DNA of 56,893 nucleotides from Perkinsus chesapeaki ATCC PRA-425 (GCA_013115145.1 JAAPAO010000182.1:1-56893), one strand, 5' to 3'. Counted from the stretch's first letter, positions 16,925 through 50,590 are shown. Translations and numbers: made by a program. Notes: generated from the letters alone by a model not told the origin.

Positions 16925-17914
16925 ATGATTTACTTCCGTTACATCTTCGTCGCCATTGCGGCCGTCTTCCTGAGCGGGTAAGATCCAAAGTTAAACTGCT
17001 TGTATTGCATCTGTTTCTTGCTCAGTATGAAGCGTGGTTGCGACAAGAAAAGGAGAGGCCGTGCGCCTCCGCCGACCACTACTACAACTACTACTACTAC
17101 CACTACTGAGTCGACTACCCCCGAGCCGACTACGACAACACCCGAGCCGACTACGGTGCTAGCAGCCACAACTGCTGAGAGCTCCGTGGTACCCGAGGTC
17201 GCAGAGGTGGAGAAGGCTTCTGCTGAGCTTAATAATACTCTATCGTCTGGCGGAGAGGAAGAGCTTGGTAGGCTGATAGCATATGCAGGTCTAGATTATG
17301 GTTTTTCTATCAGATGATGCTCTGTCGAATAAGACAGGCTCGGACGATAACTCCTTCGACGCAGCTGTAGCCGCGCATAACTCTGCTGCCCATCGAGTAT
17401 CCGTAGAGCCGACCGGTCCCGTGAACATTGACGACGAGTCGAGCAAGGGCTCGGAGACAGCTTGCGAGGCTCGGTTCGGAGGCGACACTGATGAGAGTGC
17501 CAAAGTGTACATGGCAAGGCGGAAGTCTCGCTCTGGCAAGTGGATGGTGAGAATCCAAGCTAACTGCGGCACTAATAGGTAGGCCTACTCTTAGCGATGT
17601 CTGGATTGGATCTCATTTCTGTTAGCTCCAAAACCATGGACAGCAGCTCCGATCTTGGTGAAAAGATGACCGATGAGATGACCTGTGAGGAAATGTTCGC
17701 CCTAATCGGCATCACCTCCGAATCCACTCTGGAAGACTTCGAGGCGGTCTGTGCTGGGCGAGGACATTCTGGCCAGCGAGGCAACTCCACAGCTGCGGCA
17801 GTGAGGGGAGGCCCTCTGGTCCTTACCGGCATCAAGCGGAATGTTGTTATTAACCAGGAAGAGCAATGGGCCAGAGCTGGTCCTAGCAAGAAGCGCTTCC
17901 TGCTTCATGCGTGA
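16925..17914 (+). CDS. Signal peptide / mucin-like linker / 4-Cys domain protein (family member A)
   Basis: MIYFRYIFVAIAAVFLSG|MKRGCDKK..T-rich..|DD...TACEA...WMVRIQANCGTNS|SKT...MTCEEMFALIGIT...FEAVCAG; canonical introns. Confidence 0.8.
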
Positions 17915-18062
17915 AAACAATGTCATGCTAGCTCGCTGTTGCGATCTGTACAAACGTTAAAGGCGCGTTCGCCTAACCTTTGCTTTGCGGTTGTGTTCTC
18001 CTTTCCTTGCACCATCATCACATTGCTAGTTATTTTCAAGCCTCTTTGATACCTGGAACGAA

Positions 18063-18818
18063 ATGAAGTTCTTCACTCGTCAAACCATCTTGCTTGCCAG
18101 CGCCTCCTTGGCTCTCATCGGGTAGGCTCTGCTGTCTCTGCCGTGGTATTTGTCACGTTCGCTCTTCCAGGCTCCAAGGTTGCGGTTCTAAAGACAAGAA
18201 GGCAGCAGTTGAGGCAGCTGTTGAGGACCTCGCCACGGAGCAGGCCGACTACGACAACTTCGTAAGTCTTATCCTCAAAGATGATCTTGCTCGGCGTACT
18301 CTGTTCCTTCAGTCCGTCGAGAATCTTTTCCGAGGCAGCGGCGGCCGATACCAGATCTGCAGCGTTAATGGCACCGACCCTGAGATGCCTGACTCCGTAC
18401 AGGGTCTCTTCAAACTCCGAGTGGAGAGGATTCTAGGCAATGGAGAGAGCGAGTGGAAGGCAGTGCTCCATGGCTTCTGTGGAGCTGCTGGGTGAGGCTC
18501 GGAATTCCCTTAACTTGGTGTTTATGAGTGTCTCTGCATCTCAGGCACCTTGAGAAGGAGCTCGAAGCCAACCACACTAGCAAGCTCCAAGGCGAAATGG
18601 ATTGCAAAGGAGTTTGGGGTGTCTTCGACATCACCCACGACTCGGGCCTTGACGCCGTCGTTGCCGTATGCGACGAAGTCCTGGGGCCACAGTCTAGCAC
18701 AAACTCCACTGCCCCGGCCAACGCCACCGAAAGTACACCCACCAGCGACCCTGCCGCTGTTGCGAGGAGGAATCTGCTGAAGAGACGCTACCACCGTGCA
18801 GCTCTCCATTTCAGTTAG
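18063..18818 (+). CDS. Signal peptide / LQGC / 4-Cys domain protein (member B)
   Basis: MKFFTRQTILLASASLALIG|LQGCGSK...DNF|SVE...YQICSV...LFKLRVERILGNGESEWKAVLHGFCGAAG|HLEKEL...MDCKGVWGVFDIT...VAVCDEV. Confidence 0.85.
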
Positions 18819-46903: not shown

Positions 46904-47791
46904 ATGAAGTTCTCAAAGTACACCAGCTCGATTACAGCTGCAGTCGCTGTACTCCGGTGAGTTCCTCTTCGGTTACACCGCATGACAATAACTTGGTGAA
47001 TCAGCCCGACTGTGGTATTTGGTCATGCTGCTGCAGGAGCAGCATTAATGCCCATCTCACTCGTTGAAGTTAAACAGACCGCCACCGTTCCTACTTGTAA
47101 GCTTTGGGCTCGCTGATCAACACATGGATCATTATTAGGTGTTCCGCTCGGCTTCCCAGCACCGGACACGTCAAACCCTCTTCGTCTGGCGCCCCCAGGA
47201 ACACCCCTCCTCCGGTTCGTAACAACGCTCCTGCGAGGACGACAGCTCCTCCTCCTCCGCCGCCGCCTCCAAGACCAACACCACGAAGAGAGGTGCCAAG
47301 TAGCAATCATCAGGCGTCATCGCAGGACTGGGCCAATGTAAGCAATTGTCGGTTGGGGTGTTATTAGCTGTTTGATACTAACCCGAATTTATGTTCAACT
47401 GGCTTTATTAGCTTTAGCTTCAACTGTTAGGTGAGCCCAACGGAAGTCGAGGCAAGTGGCAAGAAAAGCTGCACTATCCGCTCCAGTGACGGCAGTAAAA
47501 TCACTGTTTATTCTGAGCCGGCCGCCGGTGGTTCGATATATCCGAAGACAACTGCACAGTGCAAAATTGGGTAAGCTGACATTATCATCCTGACGGTAAA
47601 TGGAAGTCTTTTTCAGAGGAGTAATGAGAAGTGTTTTCCAATTTTTACGCGGACTTGAGCGCATCTTTGGCGATAAATTCAGCAGTTACTTCTTCAAAAT
47701 GGATTGTAAAGAAGTCTTTAGAAACACCGGCATCCAGGCAAGCAGTAACGATGAAGGTGTTGCTGAGATGTGCAGGAAGCTTACATCATAA
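46904..47791 (+). pseudogene. 4-Cys domain family member F (apparent 1-nt frameshift at about 47163)
   Basis: MKFSKYTSS...|..VEVKQTATVPT|CVPLGFPAP-[shift]-GHVKP...QDWAN|VSP...SCTI...AQCKIG|GVM...MDCKEVFRNTGI...AEMCRKLTS*. Confidence 0.65.
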
Positions 47792-50590
47792 ACATGACAA
47801 GCTCATACTTCATAATGACATGTCCTTGTTGAGATTTTGAATGTTCCAACAATCACGGCAATTGTGTTTGTCAATTTATCGGCTTGCGGTCCGTAATAGC
47901 GCATCTTAACGATTCATTTTCAATGCTTCTCAAGTGGCTTTGGCCAATCCTTTCGATAATCATAACCTCTGGGTAAGAATAAGGTGAAACTCCAACAACA
48001 GACGTCTGATGATCTCAGGGTGGAGTGCCCGAAATGTCGAGGGGCTGCTCCACGGTTGTCCAGTTTTTTACAACAGCGCAACCGACGAGAGGGCTGTCCT
48101 TGCCATGAGAGCTCTACGTGATTACATCGGTCATTTGACTCTCCGCTGTTCCTTCTGTGAAGCAATGTGTGCGCTGCGTTGCGAAAGGTTTGGTCATCAC
48201 CGGTGTTGCTTGGCCAGGCCTCTTACTTATTTCGTCACCCAAAATGACAGTCATCCGCCTTGGTCTCGTGGGGATGATCTACGCCCTTCTAGGAACAACG
48301 TAACTCTCTTGAAGTCTGTGTTTCGGCGATAGCAGTCTTATGTTCAGGTTTTCAGGTTGTGGTGGCTGCTGTTGCGGCTTCTGTGGTGACCACACAAGTA
48401 GCGTTCACGAACAAAGTGTTGAGTATGATGATTCTTCGGAGCGGTCGGCCGCACTGTTGCACTTGGCAAGGCAGCTGAGCCCTCGAAGGAAGGAAAGAGC
48501 TTCAACGACACCTGCTGGTAGCGATACCTGGATTCGAATTCCTATTGGTCAACCGGTCTTCCTTTAGATGATGGCACGTCCACGAAACTAGCCCCTAGTA
48601 GCACAACGACACCTGCACAACAGAAACGGTTATCTAATATGCTGGACATGGCAACAACCACAACACCGCGGATTCCGACTACCAGACCGTCTACCACTAC
48701 TGCTAGGAGAACTACTACCCCAAGGACAACTACTACCACTACTACCACAAGAAGAACAACCTCTCCAACACAGCCTAGTACTCCGCCGCGAATGGTGGAT
48801 CCATCAGAACCAATGTCTAGTAGCAATCGTCAGCCTCCATCTTCGAACTGGGCCAATGTGAGTTTTCCAGCTTCTACCTTAAAACTTCGCTAACACTCAA
48901 GGCATTGTCTCGAATTGCTGAAAGCCTGTCGTAGCCTCACGTGCATTCCTTCCTCGAAGCTATCTTTTAGCCTATGGTTCACTAGAAGTGGATATTCATC
49001 AGACTACGACCCATTCTCGTTCGATGTCAACCCTCTGGTCAGCAAAACAGGTTAATACTCTATTACTTTCGCCAGCGTCTATTCATTCCTGTGACAACGT
49101 GCTTGAAGCTCGTAGCGCTGAGCTACGTCTAATTTCTTATCTATGATATGATTTATAACTGTCAAAGTGTGCTTTATTATTCCCAAACTTCAGAGATGGT
49201 TGTTCGGCTGGCGAGCCGGGGGCCTACAATATGTGCGTGTGGTCAGGTTAGCCCTATGGAGCAAGATCCTAGTGGCAAGAAGAGCTGCACCATTCATTCC
49301 AGTGACGGCAGTAAAATCACAGTTTATTCTGAGCCGGCCGCCGGAGGTTCGATATATCCGAAGACAACTGCACAGTGCAAAATTGGGTAAGCTGACATTA
49401 TCATTCTAACGGCAAATGTTAGTCTTTTTCAGAGGAGTAATGAGAAGTGTTTTCCAATGTTTACGCGGACTTAAACGTATCTTTGGCGACAACTTCCACA
49501 CTTACTTCTTCAAAATGGATTGTAAAGAAGTCTTTAGAAACACCGGCATCCAAGCAAGCAGTAACGATGAAGGTGTTGCTGAGATGTGCAGGAAGCTTAC
49601 ATCATAAACATGACAAGCTCATACTTCATAATGACATGTCCTTGTTGAGATTTTGAATGTTCCAACAATCACGGCAATTGTGTTTGTTAATTTATCGGCT
49701 TGAAGTCCGTAATACCGCATCTAGCCCAATCATGCCCAACAGTGGTCTTGGTCAGTCCTCTCGAAAGTAGCAACCCCTCGGTTTAGAAGCTCTCCCTGAG
49801 AGTTATCTGAGAAACCGACTCCAACAACAGACGTTTGATAATTTTAGAGTCGAGGGCCCGAAATGTCGAGGGGCTGCTCCACGGTTGTCCAGTTTTTTAC
49901 AACAGTGCAACCGAAAAGAGAGCTGTCCTTGCCATAAGAGTTCCACTTGATTACATCGGTCGTTTGACTCTCCGTTGTTCCTTCTGTGAAGCAATGTATG
50001 CGCTGCGTTGTCAAGGGCTGGTCATCTCCTCTAGTGTTGCTTGGTCAGGCCCCTTAATTGTGTTATCACCTAAAATGTCAGTCATCCACCTTGGGCTTTT
50101 GGGAATGCTTTTCGCCATTCTATCAACAACGTAACTCTTTTCAAGTTTGTGTTTAACGATACCGTTTTCTGTTTAGGTTTTCAGGTTGTGGTGGCTGCTG
50201 TTGCGGCTTCTGTGGTGACCACACAAGTACCGTTCACGAACAAAGTGTTGAGTATGATGATTCTTCGGAGCGGTCGGCGGCACTGTTGCACTTGGCAAGG
50301 CAACTGAGCCCTCGAAGGAAGGAAAGAACTTCAACGACACCTGCTGGTAGCGATTGATACAGATTCCTATTGGCTTATCAATCCTGTTCAAGATGATAGC
50401 ATCGATCAAGAGTCTACAACATTGGTGCCGAGTAGCACAACAACACCTGCACAACAGAGGCGGTTGTCTAATATATTAAACATTGGCACTACAACTACAA
50501 CACCACGGCCCCAGACTACCAGGCTGTCTACCACTACTGCTAGGAGAACAACTACTACCGCCACTAGCACTACCACAACAACCACCACCA
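47455..50590 (+). repeat. Recent tandem segmental duplication, two imperfect copies offset by about 1.82 kb
   Basis: About 47455-48760 aligns by eye with about 49271-50590, including exons, introns and the intergenic spacer (e.g. 47600 vs 49416). Confidence 0.9.
48244..49607 (+). CDS. Signal peptide / FSGC / Thr-rich / 4-Cys domain protein (member G)
   Basis: MTVIRLGLVGMIYALLGTT|FSGCGGCCCGFCGD...TPA|DDG..T-rich..SSNWAN|VSP...SCTI...AQCKIG|GVM...MDCKEVF...EMCRKLTS*. Confidence 0.8.

What the first reader, a model, noticed from the sequence alone, without database searches (positions are those of the whole stretch)
16925..50200. Eukaryotic signal peptides spliced onto a lipobox-like [LIF]-[QES]-G-C motif
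In eight genes the first intron is phase 2 and falls just before LQGC (B, C), IQGC (D), LEGC (E and 46214), FSGC (G, H) or MKRGC (A), usually followed by G/S and K. This resembles the bacterial lipobox ([LVI][ASTVI][GAS]C), where the Cys is lipidated by Lgt/LspA, a pathway not canonical in the eukaryotic secretory route. Inference: these may be lipid-anchored surface proteins, modified either by Hedgehog-like N-terminal Cys acylation (MBOAT/HHAT type) or by DHHC palmitoylation next to an uncleaved anchor.
Basis: partly seen in the sequence, partly recalled or inferred. Interest (0 to 1): 0.8.

Follow-up and report, generated by a model that had tools for sequence, protein, structure and literature searches.

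The report
Parasite proteins with bacterial-lipoprotein-like leaders
A clam parasite (Perkinsus chesapeaki) has a cluster of genes whose proteins start with a short secretion leader ending in an unchanging glycine-cysteine pair, much like the signal bacteria use to fasten proteins to membranes with a lipid; this hints at a lipid anchor not yet described in such organisms, but it remains unproven.

Summary
Gly-Cys is invariant in 21 of 21 copies despite synonymous codon changes, while leaders (14% identity) and linkers (7%) have diverged. The genes are not independent cases. They are one Perkinsus-only family (leader, Cys, disordered tether, novel four-Cys domain) plus a neighbour, X, that shares the 5' module.

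The layout resembles bacterial lipoproteins, but the canonical lipobox is met in 0 of 21 because position -2 is polar. No modifying enzyme could be tested.

Best reading (about 0.4): a cleavable ER signal peptide cut at Gly|Cys gives a mature N-terminal Cys that acts as a covalent, probably lipid, anchor. This would be analogous to bacterial lipoproteins and Hedgehog palmitoylation, not homologous to them. Rivals are a disulfide role for the Cys, or an uncleaved anchor with cytosolic palmitoylation.

The scan flagged a second "lipobox Cys19" family elsewhere in this genome (s1-235041); I did not examine it.

The parts
15556..16120 (+). Exon 1 15556-15614, intron 15615-15658 (44 nt, phase 2), LQGC 15660-15671 (Cys codon 15669-15671).
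   Evidence: domain halves found by HMM at 15801-15905 and 15971-16105
16925..17914 (+). Gene A. Exon 1 16925-16977, intron 16978-17025 (48 nt, phase 2), MKRGC 17027-17041, then a polybasic stretch (DKKRRGR) and a Thr/Pro-rich stalk. The second domain half is at 17648-17755. The 3' end is approximate.
18063..18818 (+). Gene B. Exon 1 18063-18121, intron 18122-18170 (49 nt), LQGC 18172-18183. There is a further in-frame 51-nt intron at 18262-18312 and another intron at 18492-18544.
   Evidence: orthologues P0001 and P0002
18989..19637 (+). Gene C. Exon 1 18989-19041, intron 19042-19090 (49 nt), LQGC 19092-19103.
19901..20548 (+). Gene D (166 aa). Exons 19901-19965, 20016-20130, 20183-20334, 20383-20548. 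IQGC at 20017-20028.
   Evidence: (orthologue P0004)
20700..21355 (+). Gene E. Exon 1 20700-20767, intron 20768-20813 (46 nt), LEGC 20815-20826.
46214..46718 (+). Gene X (153 aa), which has no four-Cys domain. Exon 1 46214-46266, intron 46267-46309 (43 nt, phase 2), LEGC 46311-46322 followed by the Cys string GGCGGCCCGMCAC, then a coiled-coil-like, Ser-rich tail.
   Evidence: (orthologue P0006)
46904..47791 (+). Gene F, a four-Cys family member. It has the same upstream motif and a phase-2 first intron (46957-47004) but no Gly-Cys after the leader.
48244..49607 (+). Gene G (276 aa, NCBI model P0007). Exon 1 48244-48299, intron 48300-48347 (48 nt), FSGC 48349-48360 followed by GGCCCGFCG, a Thr-rich stalk and a four-Cys domain. 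It is a chimera created by a tandem duplication.
50075..51264 (+). Gene H, not annotated at NCBI. Exon 1 50075-50130, intron 50131-50176 (46 nt), FSGC 50178-50189 followed by the Cys string. Exon 2 ends at 50346, and a 46-nt intron (50347-50392) joins it in frame to the Thr-rich ORF and four-Cys domain.
51551..52400 (+). Gene I, a four-Cys family member (216 aa in the NCBI model). It has a phase-2 first intron (51583-51632) and no Gly-Cys.
16907..16916 (+). One example of the upstream motif CARGCCYCTT. Other copies are at 18037, 18970, 19891, 46201, 46881, 48215, 50046 and 51521, each 10-30 nt before a family ATG.
   Evidence: (11 matches, 0.44 expected by chance)

Best explanation
Shown: the window is a Perkinsus chesapeaki contig carrying a Perkinsus-only gene family, Z and A-E in array 1 and F-I in array 2, plus a neighbouring gene X. 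In nine of the twelve genes, a shared 5' module encodes a 20-26-residue leader that ends in [LIFM]-[QEKS]-Gly-Cys-[G/S]-[S]-[K]. Inferred: the leader is a cleavable ER signal peptide, and signal peptidase cuts between the invariant Gly (-1) and Cys (+1). The mature protein therefore begins with Cys, followed by a 25-60-residue disordered Ser/Thr/Ala-rich or polybasic tether and a globular domain that probably carries two disulfides. More tentatively inferred: this N-terminal Cys is a covalent attachment point, most likely a fatty-acyl anchor added in the secretory pathway, which holds otherwise anchorless proteins on the parasite surface. That would make these proteins functional analogues of bacterial and archaeal lipoproteins and of Hedgehog/Spitz N-palmitoylation, produced by an unidentified enzyme and not by the bacterial Lgt/LspA route. 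The constant phase-2 intron just before the motif is inherited from the common ancestor of the module and is not part of the signal.
For: Module and junctions. Independent annotations give the same junctions (P0002, P0004, P0006, P0007). Selection acts at the protein level: Gly and Cys are 21/21 with 3 and 2 synonymous codons respectively, and there is a conservation island from -3 to +3 while leaders share 14% and linkers 7% identity. Signal-peptide rather than anchor character: Cys sits at residue 21-27, the uncharged stretch is 14-22 aa, the strict hydrophobic core is 11-20 aa, and estimated insertion energy has a median of +2.1 kcal/mol with only 4 of 21 below 0. Gly at -1 and mostly L/I at -3 are compatible with the eukaryotic -3/-1 cleavage rule (established knowledge). 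Lumenal or extracellular character of the mature part: four Cys are invariant in every member, an NGT sequon is conserved in a variable loop of B in three species, Thr/Pro-rich stalks occur in A, G and H, and the AlphaFold model shows a leader helix, a disordered segment at 22-49 and a confident beta/alpha domain. B, D and E have no C-terminal hydrophobic or GPI-like tail. K/R lies within six residues after the Cys in 17 of 21, which matches the HHAT substrate rule (N-terminal Cys plus a nearby basic residue) quoted in 10.64898/2026.08.27.744591. The only weak NCBIfam alignments are to N-termini of bacterial lipoproteins, and UniRef auto-names P0002 'Lipoprotein'.
Against: There is no direct evidence for cleavage or for any lipid. 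No SignalP run was possible, and no enzyme search of the Perkinsus proteome was possible with these tools. [quoted passage not shown] At -3 the residues F, M, Q or K occur in 7 of 21, which is poor for signal peptidase I. Family members F and I lack the Gly-Cys, so the Cys is not essential to the domain. In X, G and H the Cys heads a string of 7-8 Cys, a feature otherwise typical of cytosolic S-palmitoylation or metal binding. Gene A has a strongly basic flank after the Cys (+4 to +5), which by the positive-inside rule would favour a cytosolic C-terminus. An invariant first Cys could equally serve a disulfide.
Confidence: 0.4

Rival explanations
1. The signal peptide is cleaved at Gly|Cys, but the N-terminal Cys is not lipidated. 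Instead it forms an intermolecular disulfide, for homodimerisation or for covalent linkage to a partner or to the trophozoite wall. Alternatively, in X, G and H it is part of a metal-binding Cys cluster.
For: This gives the same invariance of Gly-Cys without needing an unknown enzyme. The family is Cys-dependent, with four invariant Cys. The CGGCGGCCCGMCAC and CGGCCCGFCG strings resemble metallothionein-like clusters (resemblance from general knowledge). G and H put the string on the same side of the membrane as the Thr-rich stalk and four-Cys domain.
Against: It does not explain why Gly at -1 and the G-S-K after the Cys are also conserved. It also does not explain why the Cys must be exactly at the leader boundary in every paralogue. 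The proteins would have no membrane or wall anchor other than this bond.
Confidence: 0.22
2. The leader is not cleaved. It acts as an N-terminal membrane anchor, and the adjacent Cys, or the whole Cys string in X, G and H, is S-palmitoylated by a DHHC enzyme on the cytosolic face. The rest of the protein would then be cytosolic, for example on alveolar or plasma membranes.
For: Cys strings directly after a hydrophobic segment are classic DHHC substrates, as in synaptotagmin, LAT and cysteine-string protein (established knowledge). X has a coiled-coil-like, Ser-rich tail with an RRSSS stretch that would suit the cytosol. Gene A has a +4 to +5 basic flank after the Cys in all three species. A few leaders (D and E orthologues, X) reach negative insertion energy.
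Against: Seventeen of 21 leaders are predicted too weak for a stable transmembrane helix. N-regions are usually positive, which gives the signal-peptide orientation. Four invariant, widely spaced Cys, a conserved NGT sequon and mucin-like Thr/Pro stalks all argue for a lumenal or extracellular mature part. In G and H the Cys string and the four-Cys domain are on one polypeptide with a single hydrophobic segment.
Confidence: 0.15
3. Perkinsus has a true bacterial-type lipoprotein pathway. An Lgt-like enzyme adds diacylglycerol to the Cys, and an LspA-like signal peptidase II cuts before it. The enzymes would have come from a plastid ancestor or by horizontal transfer.
For: Ten of 21 leaders satisfy a PROSITE-style prokaryotic lipoprotein pattern (pattern recalled from memory). 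Cys position, the K/R-containing n-region and a hydrophobic -3 residue all fit. The overall architecture is lipoprotein-like.
Against: The canonical lipobox is met in 0 of 21, and charged E or K at -2 in 6 of 21 is atypical for Lgt/LspA substrates (motif as given in PMC12462473). The enzymes are regarded as bacterial only, and no paper links them to Perkinsus. The family has no bacterial homologues among 1.84 billion representative proteins.
Confidence: 0.03
4. The motif is only a historical leftover of paralogy, or a nucleotide-level splicing signal next to the acceptor site, with no function at the protein level.
For: All copies descend from one 5' module, sharing the upstream motif and the intron phase. 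The motif starts one base after the acceptor site.
Against: The Gly and Cys codons vary synonymously while the amino acids never change. The surrounding leader and linker have diverged almost to randomness across three species and nine paralogues. F and I splice at the same place without the motif.
Confidence: 0.03

Closest known systems
Bacterial lipoproteins (Sec/SPII signal peptide with lipobox; Lgt, LspA, Lnt)
   Same: A short leader with K/R near the start, a hydrophobic core, a hydrophobic residue at -3, a small residue (Gly) at -1 and an invariant Cys at +1 at residue 21-27. The Cys is followed by G/S-rich disordered tether and a globular domain with no other anchor.
   Different: The host is a eukaryote and the genes contain spliceosomal introns. 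Position -2 is polar or charged (Q/E/K/S/R), so the canonical lipobox fails in 21 of 21. Position -1 is always Gly, never Ala or Ser. The enzymes are not known in eukaryotes, and the family has no bacterial homologues.
Archaeal lipobox proteins (AliA/AliB-dependent; PMC12462473)
   Same: This is a precedent that a lipobox-type N-terminal Cys signal can be served by enzymes unrelated to Lgt.
   Different: It belongs to a different domain of life with different membrane lipids. [quoted passage not shown] Whether AliA/AliB relatives exist in Perkinsus was not tested.
Hedgehog and Spitz N-terminal Cys palmitoylation by HHAT/Rasp (GUP1/HHAT clade of MBOATs)
   Same: An ER signal peptide is cleaved to expose an N-terminal Cys. 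Small residues and a basic residue follow shortly after the Cys (C-G-S-K here, CGPGRG in Hedgehog). Gene A has a polybasic stretch, as Shh does. The modification takes place in the secretory lumen.
   Different: Peptide acylation by this clade has been reported only in eumetazoans, and outside animals the clade remodels GPI anchors (10.64898/2026.08.27.744591). In HHAT substrates neither the -1 residue nor a hydrophobic -3 residue is fixed. The basic residue here is mostly at +2 or +3, not +4 to +6. X, G and H lack it.
Juxtamembrane Cys-cluster palmitoylation of single-pass proteins (synaptotagmin, LAT, cysteine-string-like)
   Same: X, G and H have 7-8 Cys directly after the hydrophobic segment.
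   Different: Those clusters face the cytosol next to a stable transmembrane helix. Here the leaders are signal-peptide-like, and in G and H the string is on the same polypeptide side as a mucin-like stalk and a probable disulfide domain.
Plasmodium exported-protein genes (signal-peptide exon, intron, PEXEL at the start of exon 2)
   Same: The gene layout is similar: the leader is in exon 1, and a short conserved processing or sorting motif sits right after the first intron in a multigene family (comparison from general knowledge).
   Different: The motif is different (RxLxE/Q/D), the protease is different (plasmepsin V) and no Cys is involved. The resemblance is one of gene architecture only.

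Membership tests
Bacterial Sec/SPII lipoprotein signal | Lipobox [L/V/I]-3 [A/S/T/V/I]-2 [G/A/S]-1 C+1 (as given in PMC12462473) | tested here: not met
   0 of 21 modules match, because -2 is Q/E/K/S/R and -3 is F/M/Q/K in 7 of 21
Bacterial Sec/SPII lipoprotein signal | Looser PROSITE-type pattern {DERK}(6)-[LIVMFWSTAG](2)-[LIVMFYSTAGCQ]-[AGS]-C, with Cys at residue 15-35 and K/R in the first 7 residues (pattern recalled from memory) | tested here: inconclusive
   The pattern is met in 10 of 21, and in 9 of 21 with the K/R rule. Cys is at residue 21-27 in all. This explains UniRef's automatic name 'Lipoprotein' for P0002.
Bacterial Sec/SPII lipoprotein signal | Presence of Lgt and LspA (and Lnt) in the genome | not testable with these tools
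   No searchable Perkinsus proteome or genome collection was available. The literature search found no link.
HHAT-type N-terminal Cys acylation substrates | A cleavable ER signal peptide that leaves Cys as the first mature residue | tested here: inconclusive
   Leader length, hydrophobicity and Gly at -1 are compatible. No cleavage-site predictor or N-terminal data were available.
HHAT-type N-terminal Cys acylation substrates | A positively charged residue a few positions after the Cys (4-6 according to 10.64898/2026.08.27.744591) | tested here: inconclusive
   K/R lies within +1 to +6 in 17 of 21, mostly at +2 or +3. It is absent in X, G and H.
HHAT-type N-terminal Cys acylation substrates | A GUP1/HHAT-clade MBOAT with peptide-acylating activity in the organism | not testable with these tools
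DHHC-palmitoylated signal-anchor proteins | A stable transmembrane segment with the Cys on the cytosolic side | tested here: not met
The mature part carries four invariant Cys, a conserved NGT sequon and Thr-rich stalks. Topology itself was not testable.
N-myristoyl/palmitoyl 'MGC' dual acylation | Gly at position 2, directly after the initiator Met | tested here: not met
   The Gly-Cys lies at residues 20-27, behind a hydrophobic leader. No in-frame ATG precedes Gly-Cys within exon 2, except M-K-(R)-G-C in gene A.

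The most novel reading that the evidence does not exclude
Perkinsus, an alveolate protist, uses a lipobox-like sorting signal, [LIFM]-x-Gly-Cys at the end of an ER signal peptide, to lipidate the new N-terminal Cys of secreted proteins and tether them to its surface. The enzyme would be one not yet linked to protein lipidation in protists: a GUP1/HHAT-like MBOAT, a lumenal GNAT-type acyltransferase like the signal-peptide-bearing family noted elsewhere in this genome, or something new. 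This would be the first lipoprotein-type N-terminal Cys anchor outside bacteria, archaea and animal morphogens.
Probability: 0.3. Interest if true: 0.85.

Novelty: new variant of a known kind. Interest (0 to 1): 0.55.

Why it matters
Eukaryotes are thought to tether secreted proteins to membranes through GPI anchors or transmembrane segments. N-terminal Cys lipidation in the secretory pathway is known only for a few animal morphogens, and lipobox proteins are regarded as prokaryotic. A conserved lipoprotein-like signal in an alveolate parasite of shellfish would point to a third, independent origin of this anchoring strategy, after bacteria and archaea. It would give a simple sequence rule for finding Perkinsus surface proteins, which are candidate host-interaction and diagnostic antigens. 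It would also make the question directly testable, because Perkinsus marinus can be cultured and transfected. If the Cys instead proves to be a disulfide or palmitoylation site, the family is still a new, lineage-specific surface or secreted protein family with an unrecognised fold.

Tried and rejected
- Homology: the four-Cys family has only Perkinsus hits among 1.84 billion representatives. It has no Pfam or NCBIfam family and no PDB sequence relative.
- Fold search: the AlphaFold model (pLDDT about 90 over the domain) has no Foldseek match. The best VIA-align score was Z 5.0, to the Neisseria lipoprotein FrpD, which is within noise. I therefore draw no inference of a bacterial lipoprotein origin.
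- Literature: there is nothing on Perkinsus plus lipobox, Lgt, LspA or MBOAT. The one lipobox mention in PMC3417536 concerns a bacterial endosymbiont.
- Exhaustive exon chaining for G and H was too permissive to be useful. I replaced it with a duplication analysis, a targeted junction test and the NCBI model P0007.
- DNA- or splicing-level explanation of the motif: rejected because of synonymous codon variation.
- The idea that spliced-leader trans-splicing at the intron-1 acceptor would expose an N-terminal Met-Gly-Cys: rejected because exon 2 has no ATG before Gly-Cys, except in gene A.
- Genome-wide prevalence: I could not measure it. In about 118 kb of Perkinsus DNA in hand, the module occurs only in this cluster. 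One unrelated signal-peptide-like gene (minus strand, ATG 7064) lacks it.
- Enzyme presence (Lgt, LspA, HHAT/GUP1, AliA/AliB, DHHC): not testable, because no collection available here holds Perkinsus proteomes in searchable form.

Full report
**Source and setting.** The window is contig JAAPAO010000182.1 of Perkinsus chesapeaki (GCA_013115145.1). A protein returned by the homology search sits on a contig of exactly 56,893 bases, and its locus maps to window positions 38244-56893. Earlier notes on this genome also name Perkinsus. The DNA is about 50% GC, with short exons and tiny GT-AG introns.

Reading upstream, each site is preceded by the following:
- an ATG;
- 17-22 full codons plus two bases of a mostly hydrophobic leader;
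- a GTA donor;
- a 43-50 nt intron and a YAG acceptor;
- one exon-2 base that completes the split codon, so the intron is phase 2.

The spliced N-termini are:

| Gene | Leader | Motif | Following residues |
|---|---|---|---|
| Z | MKAPSILFLQFTLLAALLFA | LQGC | SKQ |
| A | MIYFRYIFVAIAAVFLSG | MKRGC | DKKRRGR |
| B | MKFFTRQTILLASASLALIG | LQGC | GSKDKK |
| C | MHLWRSAAALLALLGLTM | LQGC | SNK |
| D | MDLHPFLNLLLAILAVFIGTVE | IQGC | SSK |
| E | MKFSRPSLPLLLLIGSYAVTMLH | LEGC | GSK |
| X | MLLRYAAVIVAGIALIFT | LEGC | GGCGGCCCGMCAC |
| G | MTVIRLGLVGMIYALLGTT | FSGC | GGCCCGFCG |
| H | MSVIHLGLLGMLFAILSTT | FSGC | GGCCCGFCG |

A strand-symmetric module detector found these modules only on the + strand. 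It found none among 166 candidate leader/intron combinations on the - strand.

**What the genes are.** Tracing exons by paralogue comparison, by exon chaining and with an HMM built from orthologues shows that Z, A, B, C, D, E (array 1, 15.5-21.4 kb) and F, G, H, I (array 2, 46.9-52.4 kb) belong to one family. Its layout is:
- a leader;
- a low-complexity tether of 25-60 residues or more, rich in Ser/Thr/Ala/Gly, polybasic in A, and Thr-rich and mucin-like in A, G and H;
- a domain of about 100 residues with four invariant Cys, split by an intron right after the second Cys.

The family is confined to Perkinsus, with 4 hits among 1.84 billion representatives. It matches no Pfam, NCBIfam or PDB family. 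An AlphaFold model of the P. olseni D orthologue is confident over the domain (pLDDT about 90). It shows five strands followed by helices, a leader helix at residues 3-18 and a disordered segment at 22-49 that contains the Cys. Neither Foldseek nor the wide structural search gave a match above noise.

X (153 aa) has no four-Cys domain. After LEGC it carries a string of eight Cys, then a coiled-coil-like stretch and a Ser-rich tail.

**Conservation across species.** Syntenic loci were fetched from P. marinus (L001, L003) and P. olseni (L002). Every orthologue keeps the module: Z, A, B, C, D, E and X in P. marinus, and Z, A, B, C and D in P. olseni.

Across the 21 modules:
- the intron is always phase 2 at the same codon;
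- Cys falls at residue 21-27;
- Gly(-1) is 21/21, encoded by GGT 11, GGC 5, GGA 5;
- Cys(+1) is 21/21, encoded by TGC 12, TGT 9;
- position -3 is L11 I3 F3 M2 Q1 K1;
- position -2 is Q12 E4 K2 S2 R1;
- position +1 is G14 S3 D2 A1 N1;
- position +2 is mostly S;
- position +3 is K in 13.

Column entropy is 0 bits at Gly and Cys and 1.5-2.0 bits from -3 to +3, against 2.5-3.1 bits elsewhere. Window paralogues share only 14% identity in the leader and 7% in the linker. The motif is therefore under protein-level purifying selection. It is not a DNA or splicing signal and not a passive leftover. Gene models made by others give the same junctions (P0002, P0004, P0006, P0007).

**The cases are not independent.** All family genes and X carry the motif CARGCCYCTT 10-30 nt upstream of the ATG. 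It occurs 11 times in the window against 0.44 expected, and it is conserved before the orthologues. F and I keep this motif and a phase-2 first intron of 48-50 nt but have no Gly-Cys. In P. marinus, X lies only 6 kb downstream of array 1, and there is no array 2 after it.

Array 2 contains a tandem duplication of about 1.8 kb: 47455-47906 matches 49271-49722 at 94%, and 47989-48758 matches 49818-50601 at 84%. G is therefore a junction chimera of an H-type 5' half and an F-type 3' half, which agrees with note s1-221300. So there is one ancestral 5' module (upstream motif, leader exon, intron, x-x-G-C) that spread by duplication and recombination. The constant intron phase is inheritance.

**Comparison with the lipobox.** The canonical motif [LVI][ASTVI][GAS]C (PMC12462473) is met in 0 of 21, because -2 is polar or charged. 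A looser PROSITE-type pattern, recalled from memory, is met in 10 of 21. That explains why UniRef auto-names the P. marinus B orthologue "Lipoprotein". It also fits the fact that the only weak NCBIfam alignments are to N-termini of bacterial lipoproteins. The resemblance in layout is real, but membership of the bacterial signal class fails on a defining feature.

**Cleaved signal peptide or anchor?** The evidence favours a cleavable signal peptide with a lumenal or extracellular mature part:
- The uncharged stretch is 14-22 residues and the strict hydrophobic core is 11-20.
Most leaders would not be stable transmembrane helices.
- N-regions are usually positive.
- The mature parts carry four invariant, widely spaced Cys.
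- An NGT sequon is conserved in an otherwise variable loop of B in three species.
- Thr/Pro-rich stalks occur in A, G and H.
- There is no C-terminal hydrophobic tail.
- In H, exon 2 (the Cys string) joins in frame through a 46-nt intron to a long Thr-rich ORF that has no ATG of its own. The NCBI model of G (P0007) has the same single-polypeptide layout. So the Cys string and the four-Cys domain lie on the same side of the membrane.

Counter-signals are the strongly basic flank after the Cys in A, and the Cys strings and cytosol-like tail of X.

**Most likely mechanism.** Signal peptidase cuts between the invariant Gly and Cys. The new N-terminal Cys, followed by G-S-K or a basic patch, is then recognised for covalent attachment. 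A lumenal acylation is the most economical candidate. According to 10.64898/2026.08.27.744591, HHAT requires only an N-terminal Cys after signal-peptide cleavage plus a nearby basic residue, and 17 of 21 modules have K/R within six residues of the Cys. The same preprint stresses that peptide acylation by this clade is known only in eumetazoans. [quoted passage not shown] Archaea nevertheless show that a lipobox can be served by enzymes unrelated to Lgt.

None of this is demonstrated here. Cleavage, lipidation and the enzyme are all inferences. I give the full chain a probability of about 0.4, and about 0.6 for the narrower claim that the signal peptide is cleaved to leave an N-terminal Cys.

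The rivals are:
- a disulfide or metal role for the Cys (0.22);
- an uncleaved anchor with cytosolic DHHC palmitoylation (0.15), which is most plausible for X;
- a genuine Lgt/LspA pathway (0.03);
- no protein-level function (0.03).

**Limits.** I could not run SignalP, could not search Perkinsus proteomes for candidate enzymes, and could not measure how common the motif is genome-wide. Another first-stage note reports a different family with "lipobox Cys19" elsewhere in this genome (s1-235041). A follow-up note reports a Perkinsus-only family of signal-peptide-bearing GNAT acyltransferases (s1-232644). Both are untested leads that bear on generality and on the possible enzyme.

**Verdict.** The lipoprotein analogy is apt as a description of layout, but membership of the bacterial system is not supported. 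The proposed lipid anchor is plausible and testable but unproven. Interest is moderate to high and depends on experiments.

Noticed in passing
window 16907, 18037, 18970, 19891, 46201, 46881, 48215, 50046, 51521 (+); also 16195 (+) and 208-217 (-): The 10-mer CARGCCYCTT occurs 11 times against 0.44 expected. Nine copies lie 10-30 nt upstream of the ATGs of the four-Cys genes and X, usually after a T-rich run. The motif is conserved (CTT or CTC) before the orthologues in P. marinus and P. olseni. It could be a family-specific core promoter or initiator, or a spliced-leader acceptor context.
   Followed up: partly
window 19755-19826 (-): A tRNA-Pro (anticodon AGG) gene sits on the opposite strand in the 260-nt spacer between genes C and D of the array.
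   Followed up: no
window 47455-48758 and 49271-50601: A tandem duplication of a ~1.8 kb unit (94% and 84% identity in its two parts) spans the 3' half of one four-Cys gene, the spacer and the 5' half of the next. It makes G a chimera. Array 2 is absent downstream of X in P. marinus (L003).
   Followed up: yes
window 46904-47791 (F) and 51551-52400 (I): Two family members keep the upstream motif and the phase-2 first intron but have weak, Cys-less leaders. They may be soluble variants or decaying copies. The NCBI model of F starts at an upstream in-frame ATG (46865) that would place the CAAGCCCCTT motif inside the coding sequence.
   Followed up: partly
window 44725-46718; 50075-51264; L001 10958-13481; L002 6151-9694 and 10001-11621: Public gene models look wrong around this family. 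In P. chesapeaki, X is fused to the ATP synthase gamma gene (414 aa) and H is not annotated. In P. marinus, C+D+E are merged into one 454-aa product. In P. olseni, A to C are merged (840 aa) and D+E are merged (P0004, 310 aa).
   Followed up: partly
L002 about 10780-10990: In the P. olseni E orthologue, LEGC is intact, but the only plausible leader exon (MRFRQTSLSVYTATLPLLAQSSH) ends in the wrong phase for the acceptor. This could be an assembly error, a different start or a decaying leader.
   Followed up: no
window 18262-18312: Gene B has an extra 51-nt intron (GTAAGT...TTCAG) whose length is a multiple of three and which has no stop codon, so it reads through as 17 extra residues. Removing it restores the P. 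marinus and P. olseni sequence DYDNF|SV(E/D)NLF.
   Followed up: yes
P0004 residues 50-165 (model m47edf357d6b5); window 20183-20548: The four-Cys domain folds confidently (pLDDT about 90) into a five-stranded sheet plus helices. It has no match above noise in the PDB by Foldseek or the wide structural search, so it may be an undescribed fold.
   Followed up: partly
window 7064 (-): An unrelated ORF starts with a classic signal-peptide-like leader (MLVILLALLLSVSSSCLGATLKG...) that has no Gly-Cys boundary. This shows that not every secretory leader in this region carries the motif.
   Followed up: no
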